From IMG/VR virus record IMGVR_UViG_3300035703_000009, positions 62,001-126,000 of that record: 64,000 bases of DNA, one strand, 5' to 3'. The notes beneath the pieces were generated by a model. The model did not search any database and was not told where the DNA came from. It saw nothing but the letters and a program-made list of their open reading frames with translations. This document shows, one piece after another, positions 1 to 51,104 of the stretch (its first letter is position 1; every line of letters begins with the position of its first letter). The position numbers were made by a program, and so were the translations under genes.

Positions 1-264
1 GTCTTCACAGATCGGAGTTTCGTCGTCGTGTGCAGTAAGATCAGCACGACCGACACCATCACCAACATAATCCTTTTCGTACATGAACCACATGAACCAA
101 TCGAACCCATGGTCAGTTAATATACACGACCATAATTTGTGAACCAGATCGGCATATTGCTCGGTAAAATCATATAACTTGATGCCGAGTTGAAGTGCAG
201 AATCTGTCCTTTCTGTTTGTTTTACCATGAGATCGGTAAGTTCTTTGAAGTGAGTAAACGTCAT
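1..264 (-). CDS. Hypothetical protein, 3' end truncated by the window edge (MTFTHFKELTDLMVKQ...)
   Basis: ATG at 264 overlaps the TAA of the topoisomerase gene; the frame stays open to position 1. Confidence 0.7.
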   Translation of the reverse strand, partial: MTFTHFKELTDLMVKQTERTDSALQLGIKLYDFTEQYADLVHKLWSCILTDHGFDWFMWFMYEKDYVGDGVGRADLTAHDDETPICED

Positions 265-2135
265 TATTCTTGAGGTATGTTTAAAATTCTTTCTTTACGA
301 GGAGCAGAGTCAGCACCGAACCACACATTTAAGGAGTCGCGGTGAGCAATGTCGTTTTTGATCTGCACGATCTTGGGATCCTTAATGATCTCAGCATACT
401 CAAAATCTTCGAGTGCAGCTAATCCTTTCTTATATTCTATGTTCCAACCTTTTGATTGGCTTTTTTGTGACCATTGGTCAAACTCCTGATTAGTATAAAA
501 ATTGAGCACGTCCTTGCCTTTTTTTGCGACTACTAGCGGAGTCATCACCTTGTAGACTCTGCCTTGGTCGAAGAGCTCTGGCCAAAATCGGTTAAAGAAG
601 TTGATGAGTAGAGCAGCGATCGAGTTTCCGTCTGGATCGGCATCAGTGTAGATGTAGATGCGGCCATATCGTAAGCCTCGAGGCTCTTCTCCAAGCTTTA
701 GTCCTAATGATGCCATTAGCTGAACTGCCTCGTCGTTCTTGATGATCTCTGAGCTCTTCATTTCGCTAACGTTAAGGAACTTACCTTTGAGAGGAAAGGC
801 TCCCTGGGTTTGAGTATCGCGAAACTTGCGCACTGCGGAAAGGGCTGAAAGTCCTTCATAGATTCCCAAGATGCAGGGACCACGGTCTCCTTTCTTTTGA
901 GCGTCGATTAACTTTGGAATCTTCGTCTTATCTAACGTGCTGTTGAGCTTACGTAGCTCTGCACGTTCTTGGGCAAGTGCTTTCTTTTCTACCCAGTCAA
1001 GCACCGATTGAATAATCTCCGACTTAAATATCGCTTTAGCTAGCTTGTCGCTAACCTCGTGCGAGGTCTCGAACTCCTTGGGCTCGGTGATCAGCTTTTC
1101 TTTGGTTTGTGAGCTAAATGCGGAGTTGACTATCGTGCAGTCTATAAAGACCATCATGTGTTGGCGAATGTCGCTGGGTTTTACGTCAACTTTGTGCTTC
1201 TTTTTGATCATCTCACGCAGCTGTGCGATGAGCTGATTGGTGATGTACTCGACGTGAGTACCTCCGTCTTTAGTGTGGACAGAGTTCACAAAGCTTACGG
1301 TAGCGAACCCCTTTTCAGACTTAGCAAAGCCTATGTTCCAGTCCTTTGACTCTTCGTAATGGAAGTCGGTCGTGTAGAGCTTGATGTACTCTTCAAAGCT
1401 CTTAAACTTGATCGTGTGTTCCCAACTCTGACCATTGTCAGTCTTTGCAAACTTTAAGGTCAGCTTAGGGTTGCAGGCAACCACGTCCAAGCAGCGCTTA
1501 AAGATCATGAAATAAGTAGTCTCATCGATTGAGCTCATCTTAAAGCGCTCAAGGTCAGGTTGATACACGATTTGGGTAAATCCGCGCTTGGCTGGAGTGA
1601 TCACTGCTTTGCTGCGTTTGTGCATGTTATCAGTGAACTCCTGCTCAAACTTATTTTTTCCATCACAAGTAGCGATGAAGAAACTCTTACTGAAGATGTT
1701 GGTGAGAGTCGCACCCACGCCATTGGTTCCAGCAACAGTTCTCTTTTCAGAGTCATCGAAGTTTGAACCGGCCTTGAGATTGGAAAAGATCATTTCTGGA
1801 ATCCACTCTTTGTGCACTCGGTGTTTCTCGACTGGAATTCCACCATTATCCATCACTGAGATGGCGTTGGTGGTCATGTTGATTGCTACCTGGATCTCAT
1901 TGAGCTTTGGATTGCGACGATGTTCGTCGACCGAGTTAGAGATGATCTCATCGAAAAGCTTAATAAAGCCTGGATTGTAGGTCACCTCTTGCGACCAAAT
2001 CTTTTCACCGTCATATAGGTGTTGTTCATCAGTGTGCATCGAGGTCGAACCGATGTACATGAACGGGCGTAGCAGAACGTGCTCAATATCGGTGAGCTTC
2101 TGGTACTTTTCTTCTATTCCTTTTTGTTTAGCCAT
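264..2135 (-). CDS. Type IIA DNA topoisomerase, ATPase/TOPRIM large subunit (T4 gp39+gp60-like)
   Basis: EHVLLRPFMYIGS, GHKL motifs DEIISNSVDE and DNGGIP, GTNGVG, TOPRIM EGLSA, PLKGKFLN, DADPDG, YKKGLA. Confidence 0.95.
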   Translation of the reverse strand: MAKQKGIEEKYQKLTDIEHVLLRPFMYIGSTSMHTDEQHLYDGEKIWSQEVTYNPGFIKLFDEIISNSVDEHRRNPKLNEIQVAINMTTNAISVMDNGGIPVEKHRVHKEWIPEMIFSNLKAGSNFDDSEKRTVAGTNGVGATLTNIFSKSFFIATCDGKNKFEQEFTDNMHKRSKAVITPAKRGFTQIVYQPDLERFKMSSIDETTYFMIFKRCLDVVACNPKLTLKFAKTDNGQSWEHTIKFKSFEEYIKLYTTDFHYEESKDWNIGFAKSEKGFATVSFVNSVHTKDGGTHVEYITNQLIAQLREMIKKKHKVDVKPSDIRQHMMVFIDCTIVNSAFSSQTKEKLITEPKEFETSHEVSDKLAKAIFKSEIIQSVLDWVEKKALAQERAELRKLNSTLDKTKIPKLIDAQKKGDRGPCILGIYEGLSALSAVRKFRDTQTQGAFPLKGKFLNVSEMKSSEIIKNDEAVQLMASLGLKLGEEPRGLRYGRIYIYTDADPDGNSIAALLINFFNRFWPELFDQGRVYKVMTPLVVAKKGKDVLNFYTNQEFDQWSQKSQSKGWNIEYKKGLAALEDFEYAEIIKDPKIVQIKNDIAHRDSLNVWFGADSAPRKERILNIPQE

Positions 2136-3731
2136 TTATTTTGGAGCTAATTTTTTTATCTTAAGAGCCTCTAAAAAGTATTGAGGCACCTTCTTATTAT
2201 CTAATATCTGATCAAAGCACTCGTCGAGAATATAGGTCTCAGCCCAGTCCTCTTCGCTACGAACGCTACGTCCGTATGCTTGTAATAGGTCGATCAGGGT
2301 CTTCCAGTTATACCATTCCGGCTTGATCTCAAGTCTACGCTTGATTTTTTTACTCACCAAGTTTGGAAAAGGCACTTTAAGTATGACCTGAAACCTTGAA
2401 AAGTCGTCCTTTAAGTCGATACCGGTAAACATCGATGGAGATACTAATACTGTTTCTAGGCTCGAAGTTAAATGTGTCTCTAAAGATTTTTCTCTGGTAG
2501 CTGAGTCATGGAAGATGAATCGCTTGTCCTTGATTGAGGCCTTGATCCAGTTGCTTAGCTCATAGTTTGAGGTATGAACGATGCCTTTGTGCTTGGCGTT
2601 TTTTTCAAGGATCTTGGTCAAGATCGGAACTGCTCTAGCAAAGGTCTCCTTCTTGTTGTAGTATGACATCTTGCCAAACTTAAGATAGATGACTGGTCGC
2701 TTTTCGGCGTCAAACGGGCAGGGCAGGGCAAGGTGAGTCGACTCCTCAGCATCCACTCCCATGATGTAGGAGAAAAGCTCCTTATCGAGGATGGTGCCTG
2801 ACATAAAGATCACATGGTCGTAATTGTCCCAAAAGGTCTCCTTAAGGTAGATGTTACCCCAAATCGGCTCGACTAGGACTCGAACGTGACCATAATTGTC
2901 AAGCTCCTTTTCAAAGGACCAGTTAGTCTCGTAGTTCTTGCGATCGTTGACGAATCGATTGAGCTTACACATCGTCTTGTCAACATGATCGGCTTTTTGC
3001 ACTAGTGCCAGCTTCTTTGCCCTGGCCCTGATCTCTTTTGCTTCTTCGATGAGGTCAGCTGCCTTGGCGGCAAGCAGCGGAACGAGGATGGATTCCACCC
3101 AGTCTGCAGCTTCAGTAAGCGAAGTGATGTTGTCTAGGTCGCGTTCCATCCATGGTTGCCAGACGTCTAGTAACTTTAGGCTACGTTCTGAAAAGACTGA
3201 TGCGACAAAGTCACAAAAGGTCTCTTCAAAGGAATGAGCCTCGTCGATTATCAATAGCTTTGCACCACGCTCTGCCAGGAGGTCTGGCGAGTACATCGCA
3301 TAAGAAGTAATTAAGTGGAAATTGGTGAGGCTCAGCGGGTTCCTGACAAAGTGAGATTGGGCTATCTTGTATGGACATACTTCGCACTTGTTCTCAGTAG
3401 ACTTATTGAGTATGCTGGCATCGCCACAGCTCATGTTCTGCTTACGACACCAGTAATTGCCCTTGCCTTTTAGATTAGCGATAAAACTAAAGTCTCGGAT
3501 GTACTGGTCTTGCAAGATCTTGGTGTTGGTCAATACATCGATTTTTGCTTTCTTGTTGATGGTCTTGCGATACCACTCAGCAATCATGATTGCAGCGTAA
3601 GACTTGCCTGTGCCAGTGGGAGCATCGATCATCATGAACTTTTTGTCCCTGTTTTGAATTGAGTCCTTGACGAACTCTAAGATCTGATCTTGTTGAGGTC
3701 TGGGTGTGAATTCTAGTTTTATTTCTGCCAT
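2136..3731 (-). CDS. DinG/XPD-family SF2 helicase with probable FeS cluster
   Basis: Q motif PRPQQ, Walker A APTGTGKS, DEAH, MSGT, QAYGRSVRS, four Cys in WCRKQNMSC...CEVCPY. Confidence 0.9.
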   Translation of the reverse strand: MAEIKLEFTPRPQQDQILEFVKDSIQNRDKKFMMIDAPTGTGKSYAAIMIAEWYRKTINKKAKIDVLTNTKILQDQYIRDFSFIANLKGKGNYWCRKQNMSCGDASILNKSTENKCEVCPYKIAQSHFVRNPLSLTNFHLITSYAMYSPDLLAERGAKLLIIDEAHSFEETFCDFVASVFSERSLKLLDVWQPWMERDLDNITSLTEAADWVESILVPLLAAKAADLIEEAKEIRARAKKLALVQKADHVDKTMCKLNRFVNDRKNYETNWSFEKELDNYGHVRVLVEPIWGNIYLKETFWDNYDHVIFMSGTILDKELFSYIMGVDAEESTHLALPCPFDAEKRPVIYLKFGKMSYYNKKETFARAVPILTKILEKNAKHKGIVHTSNYELSNWIKASIKDKRFIFHDSATREKSLETHLTSSLETVLVSPSMFTGIDLKDDFSRFQVILKVPFPNLVSKKIKRRLEIKPEWYNWKTLIDLLQAYGRSVRSEEDWAETYILDECFDQILDNKKVPQYFLEALKIKKLAPK

Positions 3732-3753: not shown

Positions 3754-4020
3754 TTAGCTTTGGTCTAAAACCCTTAGTCCATAACCTAAATCAAACCAGG
3801 AAAATTCTCTTTCTGCAAACTTCTTGGAAGAACGAAAGTTCAACTTGTACTCTTCAAGAAACCACTTTTTCCACTCTTTGTGCTGTTCTGGAGTGATGGT
3901 ATTGTTTGAGAACCATTCTTTGTCGGTCTGCAGCACAGACGAGTCGACACCAGCGATCTCGAGCTGTTTGTGGACTGCGACTAGCGCAAACTGCAGTTTA
4001 GTTAGTTTAGTAGATTTCAT
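3754..4020 (-). CDS. Hypothetical phage protein
   Basis: 88 aa ORF co-oriented and tightly packed with neighbours. Confidence 0.7.
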   Translation of the reverse strand: MKSTKLTKLQFALVAVHKQLEIAGVDSSVLQTDKEWFSNNTITPEQHKEWKKWFLEEYKLNFRSSKKFAEREFSWFDLGYGLRVLDQS

Positions 4021-4026
4021 AGTATT

Positions 4027-4245
4027 TTATTTTTTACTGCGATTTATGATTGTGTATGAACCACACATCTTTATTGTTCCATTACATTCACATGTAGATT
4101 TGAAAGTAATGCAGCCTGAATCATCAACTACGTAGGAATCAGTGCGATACTGACCTTTGGCATCGTAAATGAGATAACGACCAGATTTACTACACGAGGA
4201 GAATATAGTTAATCCTAAGAGGAAAATGATGAGTTCTTTTTTCAT
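4027..4245 (-). CDS. Small lipoprotein
   Basis: Start moved to ATG 4245 (MKKELIIFLLGLTIFSSC): basic N-terminus, hydrophobic core and lipobox Cys. Confidence 0.7.
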   Translation of the reverse strand: MKKELIIFLLGLTIFSSCSKSGRYLIYDAKGQYRTDSYVVDDSGCITFKSTCECNGTIKMCGSYTIINRSKK

Positions 4246-4247
4246 TA

Positions 4248-5039
4248 TTATGAAGATTGATTTAATTGACTTTTGAAATACCAAAGAGTTCGCCCATTCA
4301 CATCTAATATTTGATCATCTGATTTTCCATAGCACTTGATCCAATCAGCAAAGCCTCCCGAAGGCACGTTGAATGGATTCTGCCAGTCCTTCAACTGACC
4401 TCCTCCGATCAAGTAGGATTCAAACGGAGCCTGTGAACAGAGCTCAAGTATCTTTGGATTACTAGTTATGGCTTCTCGAGCAGTCACAAATGGATTTTGG
4501 TCTGCCCGATATAGGATCTCAGCACGTAAGTAGTTTCCGATGCCATTGAAGTAACGTTGGTCCATTAACACAATGTGAATTGGTCGATTAAAAGCGCGCT
4601 TATGTAGATCAGTTACAATGTTTTGCACAAATTCTTTAGGTTCACTAAGAGGACACGGACCTCGGTGTGAGACCCAGCCATCGCTCCACTTCCACCGTGC
4701 AAACCTGCGAGCATCGACTAGACAAAGTCTTTTGCCTGAAACTGCATGAAACTTTAAGTGAGCGTGCTTTGGAGTGGAAAGGTCATCAGCTAGTTGCCAG
4801 TAACCAGACATTCCCATTGAAGCTGAGATTAAGTATTGATCTTTGCCTGAAGAAAGGATTAGCATTAGCTCTTTGCCCCTAGCTTTAGCTGAGATGGAAA
4901 AGAGTTGTAAATTAGATGGTTGTACTAGAGAAAGTCGACGAACAACCTCAGGCGAGACTGAGATGCTGGTGAAGTCTTCGCCAGCACAAGAGTCATTGAT
5001 GTACTCGGACATGATCTTTATTTCGGCTAATTCTGGCAT
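4248..5039 (-). CDS. Fpg/Nei-family DNA glycosylase, NEIL1-like with zincless finger
   Basis: Start at 5039 gives catalytic N-terminal M-P-E; RGKE, GMSG, DARRFA, H2TH FNGIGNYLRAEILYR, C-terminal GRTLWY with no CxxC pairs. Confidence 0.92.
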   Translation of the reverse strand: MPELAEIKIMSEYINDSCAGEDFTSISVSPEVVRRLSLVQPSNLQLFSISAKARGKELMLILSSGKDQYLISASMGMSGYWQLADDLSTPKHAHLKFHAVSGKRLCLVDARRFARWKWSDGWVSHRGPCPLSEPKEFVQNIVTDLHKRAFNRPIHIVLMDQRYFNGIGNYLRAEILYRADQNPFVTAREAITSNPKILELCSQAPFESYLIGGGQLKDWQNPFNVPSGGFADWIKCYGKSDDQILDVNGRTLWYFKSQLNQSS

Positions 5040-5230
5040 TATGCTTCTTTTAGTCTTAGGTAAGTAGAATAATTGATTTGGGCTTGGATCCAATCGGTTT
5101 GAGGTCGACTATCCCACTCGATCCATGCGTTATGGATTTCAGAGTCTAGCACAAAAACCGACTCCATTCTCTTAATGAGATCGTAAAGACGATTGAGATC
5201 TTCTTCTTTGACCCAGATAGTTATCATCAT
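5039..5230 (-). CDS. Hypothetical protein
   Basis: 63 aa ORF whose stop overlaps the glycosylase ATG; preceded by a bipartite promoter motif. Confidence 0.65.
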   Translation of the reverse strand: MMITIWVKEEDLNRLYDLIKRMESVFVLDSEIHNAWIEWDSRPQTDWIQAQINYSTYLRLKEA

Positions 5231-7900: not shown

Positions 7901-8303
7901 ATTTTACTTGAACTACTTGCACCTTTTCTATTTCCCGGATCTCGATCTCCTCTAACTCCTTTGATTTTATTAGAGTGTAATCGAACTTAATGTTCTCGTA
8001 TTGGTCCTCAATGAAGTCCAACGTGTTAAGGATCAGTGAGGTCGAAATGTTTGAGTTTAAGTAGATAACTTGCTTGTACTTTTGGTTCTTGATGTTGACC
8101 GCTTTATCTAGGAGTTTTTTGACCTCATAGTTTAGCAAAAAAGACTGTATTTTGTTTGGCACTATAAACTTAGTCTTAAACTTTTCTTTAATGATCTTGT
8201 TAACGTTAAGCACATAGTCTTCCTTGCTCTTCTTTTCAAATGCAGCAATGAAGTGTTTATACTCACGAACAAAGATTATGCTTACTGTTCTCTCTTCCAT
8301 CAT
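7899..8303 (-). CDS. Hypothetical protein
   Basis: 134 aa; ATGA overlap with the dCMP deaminase stop. Confidence 0.75.
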   Translation of the reverse strand: MMEERTVSIIFVREYKHFIAAFEKKSKEDYVLNVNKIIKEKFKTKFIVPNKIQSFLLNYEVKKLLDKAVNIKNQKYKQVIYLNSNISTSLILNTLDFIEDQYENIKFDYTLIKSKELEEIEIREIEKVQVVQVK

Positions 8304-8719
8304 ACTTCTAATTTTACGACGTCGACCCCAGCTTCCCTAAGTATCTGTAAGTTACTGACATCTCGATATTCTTCAGCATAGATCACCCGCTTGATTCCAG
8401 CTTGGATGATGAGCTTGGTGCAGTCTTTACAAGGAGAAAGTGTGACATATAGTGTCGCACCTTCGACGTTTTGAGTAGACCGAGCCACCTTTAAGATTGC
8501 ATTTGCCTCAGCATGTAATACATACCAGTGAGTGTTTCCATCGCAGTCTTCACACTCGTTATTAAAGCCTTTAGGCGTGCCATTGAAGCCGTCTGAAATA
8601 ATGGTTCCGTCTTTCACGATTATAGCGCCGACTTTTTTACGAGTACAACAAGAAAGAACAGACCATTGTTTGGCCATCTTTAAGTAAGTGATGTGGTATT
8701 TAAGCTCCTTGCTGATCAC
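8300..8719 (-). CDS. dCMP deaminase
   Basis: KVGAII, GFNGTP, HAEANAI and SPCKDC zinc motifs. Confidence 0.93.
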   Translation of the reverse strand: MISKELKYHITYLKMAKQWSVLSCCTRKKVGAIIVKDGTIISDGFNGTPKGFNNECEDCDGNTHWYVLHAEANAILKVARSTQNVEGATLYVTLSPCKDCTKLIIQAGIKRVIYAEEYRDVSNLQILREAGVDVVKLEV

Positions 8720-8910: not shown

Positions 8911-9777
8911 TTATTGGATGTTTGTGTGGATCCACTTTAGCAGAGGATCTTCTAGTAATTTAGGATCAGGATTTTTAAAGTCTGCAAAGAACTTAATTAA
9001 GTCGGAAGTAGGGTCCCCGTTCTCACTTATGAGGTTGACACCTACTGCTGGGATAGATTCTGGCACAAGTTCAGAGGTCAGCATCTTTTCGATTGCCTCA
9101 AAATGGTGCTCATAGATGTGAAACGAGTTATCGATGTGAGTGTATGTGCCCATCTCTAAGTCCGGATAGTGCGGTTTTAGGTGAGCAAGTGCCTGTGATT
9201 GCAAGACGGTAAAAAAAGCCAAGTCAGTCGGTAGTCCCCAAATCACGTCATTACTGCGCATTGAAATGGTGAGGTTGAGCTTGTTTTCACGAATATGAAA
9301 GATTCCATACATGGTGCACACAAAATCCCGGTTTGAGCGATACTGATGTTTTGGCAAGTTAAAGTGCATGATGGCTTGTCGCGAGTCCTTGTCCTTGATT
9401 AGGGAAGAGATCGCCCAGTCATACTGGCTAAAATCATGGTCATTGAGCTCGGTAAAAAGAAGGTTGCCATACGACGAATTTACCGTACCGTCATAGTTTT
9501 GAATGGTCGTCCAGAACTTGGCATACTCAGAGATGAAGTCGGCGTCGTTGCGTCCCATAAAATACCACAGCAGCTCAGCGGCGATGTATTTCTTTTGGGA
9601 AGACCTAAATTGATTTGAATATAGACATGACAGCGGATCCTCTAAGATCAGGACAGTATTGATGTTTTCCTTAACTAGCAGATCTCGAGGTCTGGTCTCG
9701 TATTCTGGGTTAGTCATTAGCTCATGTAGGCTTTCTCCATATACTGATGCAAAACTCTTGTCTTTATATACACGCAT
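8911..9777 (-). CDS. Thymidylate-synthase-family enzyme, T4 gp42 (dCMP hydroxymethylase)-like
   Basis: VNSSYG, DSRQAI, catalytic DFVCT, MRSNDVIWGLPTD, SFHIYE; start moved to 9777 because the upstream ATG lies inside the promoter motif. Confidence 0.85.
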   Translation of the reverse strand: MRVYKDKSFASVYGESLHELMTNPEYETRPRDLLVKENINTVLILEDPLSCLYSNQFRSSQKKYIAAELLWYFMGRNDADFISEYAKFWTTIQNYDGTVNSSYGNLLFTELNDHDFSQYDWAISSLIKDKDSRQAIMHFNLPKHQYRSNRDFVCTMYGIFHIRENKLNLTISMRSNDVIWGLPTDLAFFTVLQSQALAHLKPHYPDLEMGTYTHIDNSFHIYEHHFEAIEKMLTSELVPESIPAVGVNLISENGDPTSDLIKFFADFKNPDPKLLEDPLLKWIHTNIQ

Positions 9778-9796
9778 AGTCTTAGTATTTGACTTT

Positions 9797-9823
9797 TTAT
9801 ACATGGCATCGCACTACAAGTTT
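9797..9823 (-). promoter_or_regulatory. Bipartite promoter AAACT-N16-GTATAA
   Basis: Exact match to the recurring motif. Confidence 0.65.
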
Positions 9824-22622: not shown

Positions 22623-22916
22623 TTATTGGTTATTTTGAATGATTTTAGCTCCTGCGGTCTCAAGTGTTAGCACTAGGTTTTCCTTACGAAGCTCTTCGAC
22701 TTCTTCCTGTGCTTTCTTGATTAGGTCAGCGATCTCAATGTCGCTGGCGCCGATTGCATTTAGGACCTGAAAGGTCACATCCTCTATGTTACTCGTGCGA
22801 TAAGGCAAGACATGATATTCCTCGCCAAATTTCTTTTCTAAGCCTTCACACGCAGTCTGTACTTGCTGAACATCAGCTTTAGTCGGAAAGCCTATGATAA
22901 AAATTGGTTTTGCCAT
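22623..22916 (-). CDS. Hypothetical protein
   Basis: 97 aa; TAATG-coupled to the polymerase fragment. Confidence 0.7.
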   Translation of the reverse strand: MAKPIFIIGFPTKADVQQVQTACEGLEKKFGEEYHVLPYRTSNIEDVTFQVLNAIGASDIEIADLIKKAQEEVEELRKENLVLTLETAGAKIIQNNQ

Positions 22917-24343
22917 TACTTCTTTGCATTTTTTAAACTCTTGATCTCGCCTTGGGTTTTAATACGTTCGTCATAAAGTCTGGTCAAGATCGTACGTGCT
23001 ACTGAATCGTTTGCGCTAGAAAAAACCGTGTCGTTTTTAGTGAAGATTTCTCCACCTTTTATCTTGACCCTGTCTTTCTTACCAAGATAAGTGTCTGGCG
23101 AGATGTTGAACTGTATTTGAATATTTGGGTACATCGATGAGAAGTCATAACATGACACGTAGTTATAGTAGTCTGGGTTTGGCTTCATAACATATGCTCC
23201 CTCATAAGTTGCGTCTTCCGGTGTTCCTTCTCCCCACGGAAGTTTCATCATCTTTAGGTTCTTGTTTAAGAACTCACGACACATGAGGATCTCTGCAATA
23301 TAGACTGGGCTGAATACTTTATTGACCTCTACTTGTGCGACGTTAGCAATTGAGTAAGCCACATCAAGAAGAGAGAGCTTGTCCTCAATTAACTTAACGA
23401 GCACTACGTCGATCACATTGTAAAGAGTAAAGAGATAGGTGTCCTTTTGAAAATCAAAGAAGGTAGAGTATTTATGTTTCAGCTTGTTTGCACCGAGTAC
23501 TAGGCCGGCAATATGGTCGAGCTTGTAGTTTTCAACTACCTTGTAGGGCTTTAGCTTTTCAAACACTTGCATATAGTCTAAGACTCCTAAATGGGATGGG
23601 ATCTTGTTCTTTGACACATGAGAGCGAGAAGGCATGTTTTGCATGGAATCGAGCTTTAGGTTACGTGCACGATTCATCAGGTACTTCCAGTCAAATTCGG
23701 TCACGTTCCAGCCTGTCACAAACGATAGCTTTGGAACGATGTTATGAAAGTAGAAGCTCATCAACTCTTCTTCGCTATTGAAGTATTTGTATTTGATCTT
23801 AAACTCTTGCTGGAATAACCTGGCGTCCTCTGGTTTTAATGGAATGATCTTTCTAAAGTAGTCATTGACTTCTACTTCCATACGTGAGATCTCTTCCTGA
23901 GTTAACCCGTTTGGATGGTCATCGTCGTTTAGGATGGAAAGTATGTAGGTGACGTTGTCTTCGTTACAGAAGGAGATGAGACCGACTGGCATGCGAGCGC
24001 CTTCTGGATCTGGAAAAGAGTCATTTATTAGCTTGATCTCGATATCGAGGTAGGTCTTCTTTGGTAAGTTGTCAAAGCTGTAAATTGCTTCAAGCTCACT
24101 AGGGCTTAGTTTGTCTTGGATTAACTCTTGCACTCTAAACTGACTCACGTATTTACCTCCAGTTTGACTCTTCTTCACGAAACGACCGTCCCAGTTACGT
24201 TGCGTAGTGGCGGTCTGTGACTCAACCCAGTTGAAAAGCTCGTGATCGAGCACCCTTTTTCTGATGAAGGCTATCTTACCCGCCGCATCGTAATATGAAA
24301 TGAGTAGTGTGCCGTCTTCTAATACTTCTGAGCCTATTATCAT
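22916..24343 (-). CDS. Family B DNA polymerase, N-terminal part only (exonuclease plus motif A)
   Basis: ExoI YLDIEI, ExoII GWNVTEFD, ExoIII YNVID, YEGAYV, motif A YDFSSMYPNI; motifs B and C absent. Confidence 0.88.
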   Translation of the reverse strand: MIIGSEVLEDGTLLISYYDAAGKIAFIRKRVLDHELFNWVESQTATTQRNWDGRFVKKSQTGGKYVSQFRVQELIQDKLSPSELEAIYSFDNLPKKTYLDIEIKLINDSFPDPEGARMPVGLISFCNEDNVTYILSILNDDDHPNGLTQEEISRMEVEVNDYFRKIIPLKPEDARLFQQEFKIKYKYFNSEEELMSFYFHNIVPKLSFVTGWNVTEFDWKYLMNRARNLKLDSMQNMPSRSHVSKNKIPSHLGVLDYMQVFEKLKPYKVVENYKLDHIAGLVLGANKLKHKYSTFFDFQKDTYLFTLYNVIDVVLVKLIEDKLSLLDVAYSIANVAQVEVNKVFSPVYIAEILMCREFLNKNLKMMKLPWGEGTPEDATYEGAYVMKPNPDYYNYVSCYDFSSMYPNIQIQFNISPDTYLGKKDRVKIKGGEIFTKNDTVFSSANDSVARTILTRLYDERIKTQGEIKSLKNAKK

Positions 24344-37533: not shown

Positions 37534-40500
37534 TTACAAATATTCTCTAAAAAGACCAACTTTATCTGCACCTGCTGCCAGGAATTGGTCGACGAAGAGC
37601 AAAAACAAAGGATTTGCAGGGCTTAATCGTTCCCAGGAAGGTATGTCATCTTGACTCACAACCGGATGGAGATTACGCACAGTCAGATAGCTAGGCTTAG
37701 TTGAATCGACCATCGAAAAAGAAAAGTTAGTAGTATCGAGCTTTGGTGTAGGAGGAAGAGGCACAGTAGCAGTTACATGGTCGGCGATTCCGGCTATCAA
37801 AGCAACTAGCATAGGTAATGGTGAGTTTGCGATTGGCCCCAATACTGTTTCAACGATCTTTAGCTTTTCTTGTATGACGTCAGTGTCCATTATTTGCATG
37901 GTGTTTGACTTTCCGGTGTTTTCCCTAATTTTAGTTATTCCTATAAATGTTGGAAGATATGGTGGAGCGATTGGTGGAAAGAAAGACGGCAATGAATATT
38001 GGATAGATTCAAGTAGGTTTATTTTGGTACCTTTTGCGCTCTTGAGCAAAGAAATTATCTTGTAAAACTGGTCTAATATTTTTTCTGCGATGTCAAAACC
38101 AAGGTCAATAAAGTTCTTAAGCACTGCAAGCAGATCACTTGGATTTATGCTTAAAAAATCAAAGTCTAGTGTGGAAAAAGATGGAAGAACATCACGATCA
38201 GACTGGGCAACTACGTTGCCTGAGCTAAATGGAGATGAAGTAGGAGCCTTGATAATGGACCTAGTTGATAGATTTGTGTTAACATCGTCCGGAGAGTCAT
38301 AATTGACGTTTGGTTTGTAACCTCCGTCTGAGATGGCACTCTTTTGCGAGTCATCAGGTTCACAGGTAACTATCTTTATGTCTGAGTCCAATTTAGTAGG
38401 TTGTGCAGGCTTAGAACTTAGTGCGGCAGCTTCGCCAGCAGTCAATGTACTGTCGGCCGGCGTTATTTGCTTTGGACTTGGAGCAGTATATTTCTTTGGA
38501 TCAGGAAGAGAGTTATCTAAGAAGTCCATTAGCGCATTAAGCAAGACTGGCTTTAGCAAGTTAAGGTCAATCTTGATGCGTGCTGGAAAAGGAGTTCGAG
38601 CAGGATTTGGAATCCTTAGCTCAAAAAGAGAAGCAAGTATGCCGGAAAACGATGCAGCAAAGGTCAGTAAGTTAAAGGCTGGCACTGGAATGGCTAAGTT
38701 AGCTGGGACCGTGTTCTTTATTATCCCAATGTATGAACTAGTTAGTTCTCTAGGTGAGATCGTTTTCTTATCGCCTACCAGCGACTTAAATTGCTTTGGA
38801 GTGAGGCTCTTTACGTAGCCATCGAGTACTAGTCTAACTGACTCAATGATTGGAATTGCAGGAGAAAGCCCACTAAGATCTAGCTGAAATCCGCTCTTGG
38901 CACAACACGGAGAAAAAGGATTAAAGTCTACTTTAAGCTGACCTAGTGCAGCAAGAGCGGCTGGAGTCAAGGCAAGTGCCTCTTTGACCCTAGCATTATC
39001 AAAAATGTCAGAAAATTGTACTTGTAGTGTTTGTAACTCTTTTTCTAGGTCTCTTTTTTTCTTTGGATCCTTTTCGGCATTTACCTTGTCCTTTTGAGAG
39101 TTTACTTTTGCAGCTTGAGCCTTTACTGCGGCTTCTCCACCGCTACCTTTGAGTGAATCGACCAGTGTTGAGTTGACGTCTAGCAAATACTTTTGGATCT
39201 TGTCAAAGTCTTTTTCAACGTCTAGTGATTGGCCAGAGGCTAGGTCTCCATCGATTTTCGTCTTAATCTTGGTCTTGTTCTTTGCTAATTGCACAAGGAG
39301 CATATTGCGAAGCTTTAAGCTGTCTTGTGAGATGAAGTTTGACTTATACATGCTAGAAAACTCAAGCACTTCATTTAAAAAGTCAAGGATGGCGTTCGGC
39401 TGTGGCTCGAGCTTGCTTGAGTCCTTTGGAATAGAGATGGTCGGAAACTTTAGTCGATCATAGTATGTCTTCATGTCAGCCTTGATCGCACTGATCTTTT
39501 CATCCATGTCGGAACCATCTATCTTTACCTGTTCACGAATGGTCTTGGCAGCTGCATCATCACCATTGGCTAGTGCTTGCTGTAAATTAAGTAAGAGCTG
39601 ATCTTGACGTTTAGTGATCTTTGTCTTTAGCTCGTTTGCTTTTGTCAGGTTAGGCTTGCCTAAATCATTGATGCGCTGATGGATCGCTCGCTTTGCGTCT
39701 TCGATCGCATCCTTAGCTGACTCGGTCTTATCTAGGATATTTTGAAGCCTTTCATGAGGTCCTAAATTGGATATTGATAGTTCTAAGTTTCTTTTCTCAC
39801 GAGCTACCTTAAGTAGGCGGTTTTTATTGCCTGAAGACTTTGCAGTTGACTCGACAACATTAAGAATGTTGCGTTGCTTTGCGACTTGAGCCTTTTGAGC
39901 TGAACTCAAGTTAAACTCTTTGCCGTCTATTGCTTCTTTTGCTAGTCTTTGTATCTTTTCACGATTTGCAAGGAATGCGACTGATTTTTGCACTCCAGGT
40001 TTGATAGATTCCTCATCACCTGAAAAACCGAACTTTGGAGAAGGTCCCCTAACTGTAAAGATGTGTTGCTTAAATCCTGTGCTCGACACAAAAAAGATGA
40101 TTGGTGAGATGAAGATGCCATTAATAGTCAAAAATATGACTATTGTGCCCATTGGAGTAGCAATTGAGACTAGCGGCAACCATATCACGGGTAAAGGAAT
40201 TTTAATGAGCCCGCCTGGAGTAGGAATCACAAAGCCAACTGGCCAGTACCTAAGCTGGTTAAAGTTAGGTAGGTTCGGCATGGGAATCAAGCCCATGATG
40301 TTTGCGACCAGCGAAAACTGTACCCAATAACAAAGCTGATTTGAACAAGGTAAAGTTGCATCGGTACCTTCAGTGATGCTTTTTAAATATAGAGGATCTT
40401 TTCCTAACTTGCCCATCACCGAGACACAGTTTGCAGGTTGGGTTTCCTGATCCATTTTGTCAAAACACTCTGGGCTCTGCTTTTTTAAGCGGGCTTTTAC

Positions 40501-42154: not shown

Positions 42155-44553
<2,399 letters not shown>

Positions 44554-49278: not shown

Positions 49279-50163
49279 TTAAAAGACATCAAGTTGACCT
49301 ACTACTGAGTTTTCAATGTCTGAATAGCTATTGCTACAGTAGATGCCGTCAAGATGCTTACTAAGCTCATCAAAGCCTGCTGAAAATATGCCGTGTGAAA
49401 CGACTAGGTAAATCTTGCCAGTTCTTTCAGGCTGGGTCTTTTTGATCTCTTCGGCGATGTTTAAGAAAGTTCGACCGCCGTCACAGATGTCATCGATGAT
49501 GATTAGATTCTTTGAGTAGTGATCGATTCTGACTGGCACGTGAGTCTTACTCAGTTTACCATCGGTGTCTCGATACTTGCTACAGGTAAGGACCTCACCT
49601 GTGAATTGTAGGTTCTTAGCAACAGTATAGATCTTCTTTAGACTACCTGCGTCAGGTGAAACAAAGACGCATGATTCTAGGAAAGAGCTGACTGCTAGGT
49701 CTCGATTAGCTGCCACACGACTGATGAATGAGCTGACTATTTGAGTATTGTCAACCACTTTAAGTCGATTGATGCAGGCAGCTGCGACATCTGAGTGAAC
49801 ATCAATGCAGGTGACGCTCTCGAACTCCAATGAGTTTAGGATAGGAGCGATCACGTCTCGTAAGTAAGAAGTTCCACCTTCAACGAACTGTCGATCGCTG
49901 CGAGCTCCCATCACGTAAGGAACATACAGGTGGATTTCTTTGACTCCAAGATTACGAAGAGCTTTGGTAGCGCAGATGATTATCTCAAGATCCTTAAAGG
50001 AGTTGAAACGTGATCTGATCTCGACCATGTCTTTTTTTGGATTGATGCTTGAATGAATGGATACTGCATCAAGCAACTGAATGTCCTGCTGGCCGTCTGG
50101 AAAACGGGAGATTTTGTACTTGATTTCTGAGCAAGACTGGTCAACTAAATTTAAGATTTTCAT
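49279..50163 (-). CDS. Ribose-phosphate pyrophosphokinase-like enzyme (Adps-like, NARP1)
   Basis: FPDGQ, PYVMGARSDR, DVHS, SPDAGS, IIDDICDGGRTF, VSHGIFS. Confidence 0.9.
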   Translation of the reverse strand: MKILNLVDQSCSEIKYKISRFPDGQQDIQLLDAVSIHSSINPKKDMVEIRSRFNSFKDLEIIICATKALRNLGVKEIHLYVPYVMGARSDRQFVEGGTSYLRDVIAPILNSLEFESVTCIDVHSDVAAACINRLKVVDNTQIVSSFISRVAANRDLAVSSFLESCVFVSPDAGSLKKIYTVAKNLQFTGEVLTCSKYRDTDGKLSKTHVPVRIDHYSKNLIIIDDICDGGRTFLNIAEEIKKTQPERTGKIYLVVSHGIFSAGFDELSKHLDGIYCSNSYSDIENSVVGQLDVF

Positions 50164-51104
50164 TCAAAACTGAATTTATTTGGAGTTAATAAAAGACTAC
50201 TTTCTGTTGATGCTGAGTCGGTACGATATTTTAGGACTGCTAGATCTTTGGCTTTTGCCTCGACCTCAACATCCACATCCAAGTCATAGTGAGGAATGAC
50301 CTCATAAATGTAATCGGCATGCGATCGATTGAGAGCGCTGGCATCTTCGTACAATCTAGTACTACTATAGTGCTGCAGCGGTTTATGTTTGTACCAAGTA
50401 GAAGCTGCAAGGTGTGCGGCTTCTTGCGGAGAGAGACCGCTTGTGCAGAATCTATGATGTAGGTGGTCAAAGGTGATCGGGCAGCCTACTCCATTATAGA
50501 TGCCGTCATATAGGTCAAGCACGCTGAACTGGGTGGCTTTATCGTCATTTTCGACAACAAGGCGGGCCTTGGTAGAGTCAGCCAGGCGATCGAAGTTTGT
50601 GCAAAACCGCTGGATTGCAGAAGGCTTGTCGCCATATGTGCCGCCGATATGGATGTTGATTGGTGCGGCATAGCTTTTAGGCAGCTGCATGAGATCCATG
50701 ATGCGTGCGTGCTGGTCCAGATCATATATCGTCTTGTCGACTATACTTTGAGTAGGAGAAGCAAGCACATCGAACTGGCCTGGGTGAAAGGAGATGCGCA
50801 AGTTGTGTTGGTGCACGAACTCGCCGATTTGCTGCATGATCCCTACTAGCTTATCATAGTTAGGTAGCTGTTCGAACATATACTCGCTCATCCAAGGAAA
50901 TATGTCACTGGACATGCGATAGACTCTAATGTCATGCTCTAGGTTCCACTGCAGTATCTTACAAAGATCTTGTAGGTTCTGTTCAGCAAGTAGAGCCGCT
51001 CGAGCAATGCCTTGTTCTAGCCATGTCTTTTTGACCATGCCTCGATTTATAGTAATCCCTTGCTCACGCAAGCTAAGGTTGATGCAACAATATCCTAATC
51101 TCAT
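50160..51104 (-). CDS. uvsE: UV-damage endonuclease
   Basis: RLGYCCIN, RMSSDIFP, FHPGQF, VENDD, FDHLHH, SHAD, EAKAKD. Confidence 0.92.
   Translation of the reverse strand: MRLGYCCINLSLREQGITINRGMVKKTWLEQGIARAALLAEQNLQDLCKILQWNLEHDIRVYRMSSDIFPWMSEYMFEQLPNYDKLVGIMQQIGEFVHQHNLRISFHPGQFDVLASPTQSIVDKTIYDLDQHARIMDLMQLPKSYAAPINIHIGGTYGDKPSAIQRFCTNFDRLADSTKARLVVENDDKATQFSVLDLYDGIYNGVGCPITFDHLHHRFCTSGLSPQEAAHLAASTWYKHKPLQHYSSTRLYEDASALNRSHADYIYEVIPHYDLDVDVEVEAKAKDLAVLKYRTDSASTESSLLLTPNKFSFE

What the first reader, a model, noticed from the sequence alone, without database searches (positions are those of the whole stretch)
4248..5039. Phage glycosylase that looks like animal NEIL1 rather than bacterial Fpg/Nei
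The phage motifs run collinearly with human NEIL1 as I recall it (phage vs human): ISAKARGKELMLILS vs ISASARGKELRLILS; PKHAHLKF vs PRHAHLRF; LCLVDARRFARW vs LCFVDIRRFGRW; RGPCPL vs RGPCVL; AFNRPI..VLMDQRYFNGIGNYLRAEILYR vs AFDRPI..ALLDQRFFNGIGNYLRAEILYR; NPKILELC vs NPDLLELC; WIKCYG vs WLRCYG; NGRTLWY vs HGRTIWF. It lacks the bacterial CxxC zinc finger. Such a close match in a bacteriophage bears on the origin of NEIL1, through transfer to or from eukaryotes. NEIL1 acts on oxidised pyrimidines, which could also tie in with a modified-cytosine genome.
Basis: partly seen in the sequence, partly recalled or inferred. Interest (0 to 1): 0.75.

Follow-up and report, generated by a model that had tools for sequence, protein, structure and literature searches.

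The report
Phage-encoded NEIL1-type DNA repair glycosylase
A widespread freshwater jumbo phage carries a compact DNA-repair glycosylase that is a true relative of human NEIL1, not of bacterial Fpg/Nei, and it belongs to a large phage gene family that is the closest known kin of eukaryotic NEIL1.

Summary
Window 4248-5039 (minus strand) encodes a 263-aa protein starting Met-Pro-Glu. It matches human NEIL1 at E 5e-48, against 9e-12 for E. coli Fpg and 5e-3 for E. coli Nei. An AlphaFold model (pLDDT 95.9) superposes on human NEIL1 crystal structures (TM 0.85-0.88). All NEIL1 catalytic and DNA-contact residues are present, and there is no zinc finger. The gene is not a one-off: at least 360 IMG/VR viral contigs carry a homolog, always in the replication/nucleotide-metabolism module of large T4-like myoviruses. 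Here it is translationally coupled in an operon with a DinG/XPD-like helicase and topoisomerase II. Trees place the viral family (with a few sponge-symbiont Poribacteria nested inside) as sister to a eukaryotic NEIL1 clade that spans animals, choanoflagellates and Amoebozoa. A recent link to chordates is rejected (AU p 0.002). Which side donated the gene is unresolved. The most likely role is base-excision repair of oxidised bases in phage DNA, alongside a phage UvdE. A link to cytosine modification is possible but not obligatory. It is a new (phage) member of a known enzyme kind. Databases already auto-annotate it, but I found no paper that discusses it.

The parts
4248..5039 (-). NEIL1-type Fpg/Nei-superfamily DNA glycosylase/AP lyase, 263 aa. 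It has an N-terminal beta-sandwich, an H2TH motif and a C-terminal zincless finger.
   Evidence: Residues P2, E3, E6, K56, M77, R111, F113, N169, Y170, R172, Y237, R250 and W253 correspond to NEIL1 P2, E3, E6, K54, M81, R118, F120, N176, Y177, R179, Y263, R277 and W280.
5039..5230 (-). Small upstream ORF (63 aa) whose TAA stop overlaps the glycosylase ATG (TAATG), preceded by a purine-rich Shine-Dalgarno-like stretch. This indicates translational coupling.
   Evidence: The ORF is conserved in only 3 related loci.
3754..4020 (-). Conserved small ORF (88 aa) between the glycosylase and the helicase. Its function is unknown.
   Evidence: Found in 20 related viral loci. No Pfam or PHROG match.
2136..3731 (-). 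DinG/YoaA/XPD(Rad3)-family DNA repair helicase with a four-cysteine cluster. It lies directly downstream in the same operon.
   Evidence: It co-occurs within 6-8 kb of the glycosylase in 62 of 158 viral loci. No terminator was found between the genes.
264..2135 (-). T4-type DNA topoisomerase II large subunit, the last gene of the same minus-strand block.
   Evidence: E 1e-191. It is a neighbour in 54 of 158 viral loci.
50160..51104 (-). UvdE UV-damage endonuclease, a second dedicated DNA-lesion enzyme of the phage.
   Evidence: A UvdE gene also sits next to a divergent family member, P0170.
8911..9804 (-). ThyA-fold pyrimidine hydroxymethylase-like enzyme with the cytosine-specifying Asp.
   Evidence: T4 dCMP hydroxymethylase and MilA at 4e-20, against ThyA at 2e-11 or weaker; Cys148 and Asp179 equivalents present. 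(a separate canonical ThyA in the genome). (present in 7 of 15 related contigs).
8300..8677 (-). dCMP deaminase.
   Evidence: PF00383, 2e-24. It is a neighbour in 47 of 158 loci.

Best explanation
The gene encodes an active, compact (tail-less) NEIL1-type bifunctional DNA glycosylase/AP lyase. After the initiator Met is removed, Pro2 attacks C1' of a flipped-out damaged nucleotide and forms a Schiff base, with Glu3 and Lys56 assisting. Met77, Arg111 and Phe113 fill the gap left in the helix. The H2TH motif (Asn169) and the zincless-finger hairpin (Arg250) hold the phosphate backbone. The strand is then cut by beta,delta-elimination. The gene is expressed from the replication/repair operon of a freshwater T4-like jumbo myovirus, together with a DinG/XPD-like helicase and topoisomerase II. 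Its likely job is to remove oxidised pyrimidines, ring-opened purines and hydantoins from phage DNA in duplex, single-stranded or fork contexts. That would complement the phage's UvdE, recombination proteins and ligase. In evolutionary terms it belongs to a large tailed-phage clade that is the nearest known relative of eukaryotic NEIL1. What is shown: homology, fold, residue conservation, operon context, family size and purifying selection. What is inferred: catalytic activity, substrate range and physiological role.
For: Sequence: human NEIL1 at 5e-48 against Fpg at 9e-12. A profile built only from viral members hits NEIL1 at 248 bits, and every other Fpg/Nei structure at 86 bits or less. Fold: pLDDT 95.9 and pTM 0.91; the top 50 PDB matches are all human NEIL1, TM 0.85-0.88. 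Residues: all catalytic and DNA-contact residues are conserved in 78-82 of 82 viral sequences. No zinc finger. Context: TAATG start/stop overlap, no terminator, and the helicase and topo II downstream. Synteny across 158 viral loci lies within replication/nucleotide-metabolism modules. Other repair genes in the genome are UvdE, SbcCD, UvsX and an ATP ligase. Selection: among natural variants in independent lake metagenomes, 6 are synonymous and 1 is a conservative A84V. Ecology: the phage is present in about 20 runs from 14 studies, mostly lake water. Phylogeny: the viral clade (81/85) and the eukaryotic NEIL1 clade (78/61) are separated from the Fpg/Nei outgroups (97/96*).
Against: No enzymatic or expression data exist; no RNA run was listed. 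The lesion-recognition loop differs from mammalian NEIL1: the viral consensus is GGGQLKDWxNP, Trp stands where NEIL1 has Tyr244, and there is no Lys242 equivalent. Substrate preference may therefore differ. A beta,delta-lyase leaves a 3'-phosphate, yet no PNK3P-type 3'-phosphatase was found in the 81%-complete genome, so completion of repair must rely on host or unrecognised functions. The host is unknown.
Confidence: 0.72

Rival explanations
1. It is an ordinary bacterial Fpg (MutM) or Nei picked up from the host, and the NEIL1 resemblance is superficial.
For: Pfam recognises only the generic Fpg N-terminal domain above threshold. Other phages do carry plain Fpg genes, such as Bacillus phage G gp292.
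Against: It scores 85 bits against a 203-bit cut-off for the Fpg equivalog, and 39 against 252 for Nei. There is no Cys4 zinc finger. A gap of about 160 bits favours NEIL1. The Fpg/Nei outgroups are separated by a 97/96* branch. Among 185,579 species genomes, the pattern scan found full-length homologs only in a few Poribacteria MAGs.
Confidence: 0.02
2. It is a recent capture from an animal (or eukaryotic contamination of the assembly), so the phage copy is just a derived NEIL1.
For: It is 38-47% identical to animal NEIL1. The AU test cannot reject placing the viral clade beside animal-type NEIL1 with the protist NEIL1s outside (p 0.23).
Against: Grouping the viral clade with chordate NEIL1 is rejected (dlnL 94.6, p 0.002). 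The viral clade is far more diverse than the eukaryotic one, with long internal branches. Synteny is conserved within phage replication modules across 158 loci. The gene shows prokaryotic operon coupling. The same DNA occurs in many independent lake metagenomes.
Confidence: 0.05
3. The enzyme's main role is tied to base modification, not general oxidative repair. It might police deamination or oxidation products of hydroxymethylcytosine (5hmU, 5fC, 5caC) in a modified phage genome, or attack unmodified host DNA.
For: A dCMP/CMP-hydroxymethylase-like enzyme with the cytosine-specifying Asp, a dCMP deaminase and a separate canonical ThyA form a T4-like set. The hydroxymethylase-like gene lies within about 4 kb of the glycosylase and is syntenic in 31 of 158 loci. 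From my own knowledge, not tested here, human NEIL1 has reported activity on 5-hydroxymethyl- and 5-formyluracil.
Against: Only 7 of 15 large NEIL1-carrying contigs have the hydroxymethylase-like gene, and a 96%-complete 318-kb record lacks it. The catalytic pocket residues are those of general NEIL1. Poribacteria use the same family as a chromosomal gene, apparently as their only Fpg/Nei enzyme. No glucosyltransferase or dCTPase was looked for.
Confidence: 0.15
4. It is a counter-defence enzyme that removes host-inflicted base adducts or crosslinks from phage DNA.
For: It sits in an early/replication operon with a repair helicase. From my own knowledge, NEIL-family enzymes can unhook some crosslinks and bulky adducts.
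Against: There is no direct evidence. The PADLOC library was not searched and no anti-defence homology was tested. The conserved neighbours are replication and nucleotide-metabolism genes, not anti-defence islands.
Confidence: 0.05

Closest known systems
Human/metazoan NEIL1 (endonuclease VIII-like 1; PDB 1TDH, 5ITT, 6LWx)
   Same: It shares the two-domain fold, the Pro2/Glu3/Lys54 catalytic set, the Met81/Arg118/Phe120 gap-filling triad, the H2TH Asn176 and the zincless finger with Arg277. Identity over the whole glycosylase domain is 36-40%, with TM 0.85-0.88.
   Different: It lacks the roughly 100-residue disordered C-terminal interaction tail. It also lacks NEIL1 residues about 199-219 and a short loop near residues 62-70 (alignment). 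The lesion-recognition loop has its own conserved motif, GGGQLKDWxNP, with Trp in place of Tyr244 and no Lys242 editing site. It is encoded in a prokaryotic operon of a phage.
Mimivirus MvNei1 (L315; PDB 3A42/3A45/3A46), the published 'viral NEIL1 ortholog'
   Same: Both are virus-encoded Fpg/Nei enzymes with a zincless finger (PMC3188539).
   Different: MvNei1 is much more distant from this family than human NEIL1 is: 84 bits against 248 bits with the viral-family profile, and E 1.7e-7 against 5e-48 with the single protein. MvNei1 comes from a giant virus of amoebae, not from a tailed phage.
Bacterial Fpg/MutM and Nei (E. coli, Lactococcus, Geobacillus structures)
   Same: They belong to the same superfamily, use N-terminal Pro/Glu chemistry and have the H2TH motif.
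   Different: The bacterial enzymes have a Cys4 zinc finger, which is absent here. Sequence scores are 61-83 bits against 248 for NEIL1. The protein fails the NCBIfam equivalog cut-offs. The bacterial enzymes form the outgroup in the trees.
Chromosomal NEIL1-like genes of Candidatus Poribacteria (sponge symbionts)
   Same: They have the same short zincless architecture, are 36-44% identical, and nest inside the viral clade with 99* support for their own group.
   Different: They sit in ordinary cellular context, next to sulfatases, RlmL and an L,D-transpeptidase. They were found in only 5 of 151 sampled genomes of that phylum. They were the only Fpg/Nei-family gene detected in the four genomes searched.
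Uncultured Caudovirales phage protein CAB4175610.1 / UniRef A0A6J5PUM3 ('Nei Formamidopyrimidine-DNA glycosylase')
   Same: It is a member of the same phage family, 56% identical, on a 249-kb contig.
   Different: It is a different phage. Its database name does not convey the NEIL1 affinity.

Membership tests
NEIL1 subtype of the Fpg/Nei (H2TH) glycosylase superfamily | N-terminal Pro (after Met removal) as nucleophile, followed by the catalytic Glu | tested here: met
   The protein starts MPE. P2 and E3 are invariant in 82/82 viral and 33/33 eukaryotic sequences.
NEIL1 subtype of the Fpg/Nei (H2TH) glycosylase superfamily | Two-domain fold: N-terminal beta-sandwich plus a helical domain with the helix-two-turn-helix motif | tested here: met
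   PF01149 at 2e-16 and PF06831 at 1e-7. AF2 model with pLDDT 95.9. TM 0.85-0.88 to NEIL1 crystal structures.
NEIL1 subtype of the Fpg/Nei (H2TH) glycosylase superfamily | Zincless finger: a C-terminal beta-hairpin without the four Cys, carrying the conserved Arg (NEIL1 R277) | tested here: met
   No CxxC...CxxC. Strands 242-245 and 251-254 in the model. R250 and W253 align with R277 and W280 and are invariant. There is a weak PF09292 Neil1-DNA_bind hit at 4.6e-4, below the gathering score.
NEIL1 subtype of the Fpg/Nei (H2TH) glycosylase superfamily | Catalytic Lys54 and the gap-filling triad Met81/Arg118/Phe120 | tested here: met
   K56, M77, R111 and F113 are conserved in 78-82 of 82 viral sequences.
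NEIL1 subtype of the Fpg/Nei (H2TH) glycosylase superfamily | Sequence closer to NEIL1 than to any other Fpg/Nei subfamily | tested here: met
   Single protein: 167 bits against 48 or less. Viral-only profile: 248 bits against 86 or less.
NEIL1 subtype of the Fpg/Nei (H2TH) glycosylase superfamily | Phylogenetic grouping with NEIL1 to the exclusion of Fpg/Nei | tested here: met
   The NEIL1-like ingroup is separated from six Fpg/Nei outgroups at 98* and 97/96*. Other subfamilies (NEIL2/3, MvNei, plant Fpg) could not be added to the tree.
NEIL1 subtype of the Fpg/Nei (H2TH) glycosylase superfamily | Mammalian-type lesion-recognition loop (Lys/Arg242, Tyr244) | tested here: inconclusive
   An aromatic residue is retained (Trp219; W, F or Y in 79/82), but there is no Lys242 equivalent and the loop motif is distinct. 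The loop also varies among eukaryotic NEIL1s (Lys in 6/33), so it is not strictly defining.
NEIL1 subtype of the Fpg/Nei (H2TH) glycosylase superfamily | Disordered C-terminal protein-interaction tail of metazoan NEIL1 | tested here: not met
   The protein ends 10 residues after the zincless finger. The tail is a metazoan accessory and not part of the catalytic core.
NEIL1 subtype of the Fpg/Nei (H2TH) glycosylase superfamily | Glycosylase plus beta,delta-lyase activity on oxidised pyrimidines, Fapy lesions and hydantoins, including single-stranded and bubble DNA | not testable with these tools
   This needs purified protein and lesion-containing oligonucleotides.
Bacterial Fpg/MutM | C-terminal Cys4 zinc finger and a score above the curated equivalog cut-off | tested here: not met
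   No Cys4 motif. TIGR00577 scores 84.9 bits against a 203.3 cut-off.
Bacterial endonuclease VIII (Nei) | Cys4 zinc finger and a score above the curated equivalog cut-off | tested here: not met
   NF007763 scores 38.6 bits against a 252 cut-off. E. coli Nei sits on the outgroup side of the tree.

The most novel reading that the evidence does not exclude
Eukaryotic NEIL1, including the human enzyme, descends from a tailed-phage gene or one from the phage's bacterial host. On this reading the eukaryotic clade is nested within the much more diverse phage family and entered an early eukaryote (before Holozoa and Amoebozoa split) by virus-to-cell transfer. The same family demonstrably moved into Poribacteria chromosomes. 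The data do not exclude this. Forcing eukaryotic NEIL1 to be sister to the window's own phage subclade costs only 7.3 log-likelihood units (AU p 0.36). The viral clade is paraphyletic with respect to eukaryotes in 15% of rooted bootstrap trees.
Probability: 0.3. Interest if true: 0.75.

Novelty: new member of a known kind. Interest (0 to 1): 0.55.

Why it matters
NEIL1 is a much-studied human repair enzyme (replication-associated base-excision repair, RNA-editing-dependent specificity, cancer and metabolic phenotypes), and its evolutionary origin is obscure. The published classification lists a metazoan Neil1 subfamily, and the zincless-finger Mimivirus enzymes beside it (PMC3188539). This finding shows three things. 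A large, diverse family in tailed phages of lakes and other waters is the closest known relative of eukaryotic NEIL1, far closer than the Mimivirus enzyme. Eukaryotic NEIL1 itself reaches back at least to the common ancestor of animals and Amoebozoa. The gene has moved from phages into at least one bacterial lineage. Together these make the origin of NEIL1 directly testable by phylogenetics. They also offer hundreds of natural, small, tail-less NEIL1 orthologs for structural and mechanistic work, for example on the lesion-recognition loop. For phage biology, it adds oxidative base-excision repair to the list of repair functions carried by large aquatic phages, beside UvdE and recombination proteins.

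Tried and rejected
The following led nowhere or were limited.
- Megablast of 20 kb of the window against GenBank phages found no match. tblastn of the protein found only ordinary Fpg genes at 23-28% identity, several in 'UNVERIFIED' records that look like host contamination.
- Three single-protein scans of IMG/VR with divergent family members (P0170, P0179, P0163) found nothing, because that mode only reaches near-identical sequences. An alignment-led scan worked.
- Literature searches for phage NEIL1, endonuclease VIII-like in phages, and NEIL1 in choanoflagellates found nothing relevant. The two Mimivirus Nei papers are not held.
- No RNA-seq run holding the gene was listed.
- A PNK3P-type 3'-phosphatase that could process the beta,delta-lyase product was not found in the genome.
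- No tRNA gene in the window helps with the host.
- The first attempt to centre a genome search on a locus failed on syntax.
- I could not add NEIL2, NEIL3, MvNei1/2, plant/fungal Fpg or actinobacterial Nei to the tree, because no tool returned their sequences by reference.

I considered and rejected three ideas: bacterial Fpg/Nei, recent animal-to-phage capture or contamination, and an obligatory link to cytosine hydroxymethylation. The reasons are given under the rival explanations.
Full report
THE OBSERVATION. The window holds an ORF on the minus strand at 4248-5093. The upstream TTG is not the real start. The ATG at 5039 gives a 263-aa protein beginning Met-Pro-Glu-Leu-Ala-Glu, and every homolog starts the same way. 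The TAA stop of a small upstream ORF (5039-5230) overlaps this ATG as TAATG, and a purine-rich stretch precedes it. No terminator-like site lies between this gene and the downstream helicase.

WHAT THE PROTEIN IS. Pfam finds the Fpg N-terminal domain (2e-16), the H2TH domain (1e-7) and, weakly, the NEIL1-specific DNA-binding domain PF09292 (4.6e-4). Against all PDB chains, human NEIL1 scores 5e-48 (167 bits). E. coli Fpg scores 9e-12, Arabidopsis Fpg 1.5e-9, Mimivirus MvNei1 1.7e-7 and E. coli Nei 5e-3.

The NCBIfam models that define bacterial Fpg and Nei are missed by a wide margin: 85 bits against a 203-bit cut-off, and 39 against 252. A profile built only from viral-clade sequences (alignment A2, no eukaryotes) hits human NEIL1 over its full length at 8.6e-73 (248 bits). 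Everything else trails by about 160 bits: plant Fpg 86, MvNei1 84, E. coli Fpg 83, E. coli Nei 61, MvNei2 45, NEIL3 36, NEIL2 25.

An AlphaFold2 model built on a 61-sequence alignment has mean pLDDT 95.9 and pTM 0.91. Its 50 best PDB matches are all human NEIL1 (E about 1e-26, TM 0.85-0.88, 36-40% identity). In AlphaFold DB clusters the best cellular matches are eukaryotic NEIL1 entries at 30-36% identity. In the viral structure library nothing exceeds 23% identity.

RESIDUES. I aligned the protein with a primate NEIL1 of 390 residues (P0295). The window protein has P2, E3, E6, K56, M77, R111, F113, N169, Y170, R172, Y237, R250 and W253. These stand at the positions of NEIL1 P2, E3, E6, K54, M81, R118, F120, N176, Y177, R179, Y263, R277 and W280. 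Each is conserved in 78-82 of 82 viral-clade sequences.

None of 150 family representatives has a CxxC...CxxC zinc finger. The model ends in a two-stranded hairpin (242-245, 251-254) that carries R250, which is the zincless finger.

There are four differences from mammalian NEIL1.
- The roughly 100-residue C-terminal tail is absent.
- NEIL1 residues about 199-219 have no counterpart.
- A short loop near NEIL1 residues 62-70 has no counterpart.
- The lesion-recognition loop carries a family-specific motif, GGGQLKDWxNP, with Trp219 aligned to Tyr244 and no Lys242 equivalent.

THE GENOME AND THE NEIGHBOURHOOD. The window is bases 62001-126000 of a 207,110-bp IMG/VR viral record with estimated completeness of 81%. 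Its genes are those of a T4-like jumbo myovirus:
- topoisomerase II, a DnaB-like helicase and a B-family polymerase;
- tail sheath and tail-tube-like proteins;
- RNR large and small subunits;
- SbcCD, UvsX, a gp32-like SSB and an exonuclease;
- GroEL and NAD-salvage genes.

Directly downstream of the glycosylase, on the same strand, lie a conserved 88-aa ORF, a DinG/YoaA/XPD-family repair helicase with a four-Cys cluster, and the topoisomerase II large subunit. The genome also encodes UvdE (window 50160-51104) and an ATP-dependent ligase.

The same DNA is present in about 20 sequencing runs from 14 studies, mostly lake-water or freshwater metagenomes. Contigs from four of these runs cover the gene. 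Three of them carry seven variants between them: six synonymous third-position changes and one conservative A84V. This fits purifying selection.

THE FAMILY. The 90%-clustered protein database holds 1565 hits below 1e-5. The best 120 are proteins of about 260 aa at 53-76% identity, on metagenomic contigs up to 207 kb, and JGI labels many of them 'endonuclease VIII-like 1'. One member is CAB4175610.1 from an 'uncultured Caudovirales phage'.

The exhaustive search of 50%-identity representatives gives 136 clusters below 1e-30 and 427 below 1e-10. IMG/VR holds at least 360 viral contigs with a homolog. The nearest ESM Atlas clusters are 86-95% viral, mostly Uroviricota.

Across 158 viral loci the most frequent neighbours are the DinG-like helicase (62 loci), topoisomerase II large subunit (54), the tail-tube-like gene (58) and dCMP deaminase (47). 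In other subclades the neighbours are a guanylate-kinase-like protein, the topoisomerase II A subunit, a split B-family polymerase, RNR subunits and an ATP ligase. One deep-branching member sits next to UvdE. The gene is thus a stable component of the replication/repair module of a broad group of large myoviruses.

CELLULAR RELATIVES. The long hits are authentic eukaryotic NEIL1. They come from amphioxus, primates, tuatara, a tinamou, oyster, a tardigrade, the sponge Sycon, two choanoflagellates, three Amoebozoa (Endostelium, Vermistella, Planoprotostelium), Paulinella and the euglenid Ploeotia. Eukaryotic NEIL1 is therefore older than animals.

Among one genome for each of 185,579 prokaryotic species, a peptide-pattern scan found full-length homologs only in Candidatus Poribacteria MAGs and one unnamed MAG, plus a partial match in a Bryobacterales MAG. 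The scan has limited sensitivity. In Poribacteria the gene is chromosomal, lying next to sulfatases, RlmL and an L,D-transpeptidase. It was found in 5 of 151 sampled genomes of the phylum. It was the only Fpg/Nei-family gene detected in the four genomes searched.

PHYLOGENY. A quick tree of 118 rows (LG+C20 PMSF) used Salmonella and Listeria Fpg, phage G gp292 and E. coli Nei as outgroup. It separates the NEIL1-like ingroup (98*) into a eukaryotic clade (93) and a short, viral clade (84). The Poribacteria are nested deep in the viral clade.

A careful tree of 87 rows with six outgroups gives outgroup 97/96*, viral clade 81/85 and eukaryotic clade 78/61. When the 1000 bootstrap trees are rooted on the outgroup, both clades are monophyletic in 63%. 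Eukaryotes are paraphyletic in 18%, mostly through one wandering long branch. The viral clade is paraphyletic in 15%.

The AU tests gave three results.
- Viral clade plus chordate NEIL1 is rejected (dlnL 94.6, p 0.002).
- Viral clade plus animal-type NEIL1, with the protist NEIL1s outside, is not rejected (p 0.23).
- Eukaryotes plus the window's own phage subclade is not rejected (dlnL 7.3, p 0.36).

The conclusion is that the phage family and eukaryotic NEIL1 are each other's closest relatives and diverged long ago. A recent exchange with vertebrates is excluded. The direction of the ancient transfer is not resolved. The outgroup is distant and small, and the tool warned of long-branch effects.

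HOW IT MOST LIKELY WORKS. Established Fpg/Nei chemistry, together with complete conservation of the catalytic machinery, implies a bifunctional glycosylase/beta,delta-lyase that uses Pro2. The operon context, the companion UvdE, SbcCD, UvsX and ligase genes, and the sunlit freshwater habitat point to repair of oxidised bases in phage DNA during replication. This role is inferred, not shown. A beta,delta-lyase leaves a 3'-phosphate, and no PNK3P-type phosphatase was found in the incomplete genome, so the downstream steps are unknown.

THE MODIFIED-CYTOSINE IDEA. The ThyA-fold gene at 8911-9804 is closer to T4 dCMP hydroxymethylase and MilA CMP hydroxymethylase (4e-20) than to any thymidylate synthase (2e-11 or weaker). 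It has the equivalents of T4 Cys148 and of the cytosine-specifying Asp179. A canonical ThyA (290 bits) lies elsewhere in the genome, and a dCMP deaminase is adjacent. Hydroxymethyl-cytosine DNA is therefore plausible for this phage. However, only 7 of 15 large NEIL1-carrying contigs have the hydroxymethylase-like gene, and a 96%-complete one lacks it. The glycosylase is thus not tied to that pathway.

NOVELTY. The enzyme kind (a NEIL1-type zincless-finger glycosylase) is known, and annotation pipelines already tag these phage genes. The searchable literature did not yield any paper that describes phage NEIL1 orthologs or their position next to eukaryotic NEIL1. I file it as a new (phage) member of a known kind, with real evolutionary interest.

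Noticed in passing
window 8911-9804 (-), with 8300-8677 (-); canonical ThyA at G000:C1:176236-177336: This is a T4-like trio. A ThyA-fold enzyme is closest to dCMP/CMP hydroxymethylases and has the cytosine-specifying Asp. A dCMP deaminase is adjacent, and a separate canonical thymidylate synthase lies elsewhere. Together they suggest hydroxymethyl-cytosine (or a derivative) in the phage DNA.
   Followed up: partly
window 2136-3731 (-): A DinG/YoaA/XPD(Rad3)-family helicase with a four-Cys cluster (C-x7-C-x13-C-x2-C) is the most frequent neighbour of the glycosylase. Its best database relatives are in 630-735 kb 'uncultured phage' megaphage records (LR756501 and others) at 38-40% identity.
   Followed up: partly
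window 50160-51104 (-): A UvdE UV-damage endonuclease (189 bits) is encoded by the phage. Another UvdE lies right beside a divergent family member (P0170, locus L093), together with HNH, SmpB-like and sulfotransferase genes.
   Followed up: partly
L002-L005, G057, G068 (Candidatus Poribacteria MAGs): Sponge-symbiont Poribacteria carry a chromosomal copy of the phage-type NEIL1-like gene; one genome has two copies. It was the only Fpg/Nei-family gene detected in the four genomes searched, so it may have replaced the canonical enzyme. Only 5 of 151 sampled genomes of the phylum have it.
   Followed up: partly
window 22916-24343 (-); L102:7581-8990: The B-family DNA polymerase ORF is only 475 aa. 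In related loci a separate ORF of about 470 aa carries the exonuclease domain plus the start of the polymerase domain. The polymerase appears to be split into two genes in this lineage.
   Followed up: no
window 42155-43795 (-), 46737-48275 (-), 49279-50163 (-): The phage encodes a GroEL chaperonin (E 2e-157). It also has an NAD-salvage pair: nicotinamide phosphoribosyltransferase and ribose-phosphate pyrophosphokinase.
   Followed up: no
window 37534-42075 (-): A very large ORF of 1513 aa was not examined.
   Followed up: no
window 4027-4284 (-): A small ORF immediately downstream of the glycosylase has a lipoprotein-like signal (hydrophobic stretch ending ...FSSC). It has no homolog in any of the related viral loci, so it looks like a lineage-specific insertion in the operon.
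   Followed up: no
L009 (MG065691.1 Campylobacter phage A11a) and other UNVERIFIED records: Several 'phage' records carry an Fpg whose N- and C-terminal residues match enterobacterial MutM. Examples are Campylobacter phage A11a/A18a, the short Escherichia, Salmonella and Listeria 'phage' contigs, and two Salmonella genome contigs filed in the phage collection. These look like host DNA or mislabelled records, not phage genes.
   Followed up: no
P0228 (Paulinella micropora) and P0192 (Ploeotia vitrea): NEIL1 sequences attributed to a rhizarian (which groups among animal sequences in the tree) and to a euglenid come from a gene-model set and a transcriptome. They could be contamination or real patchy distribution. 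This matters for dating eukaryotic NEIL1.
   Followed up: no
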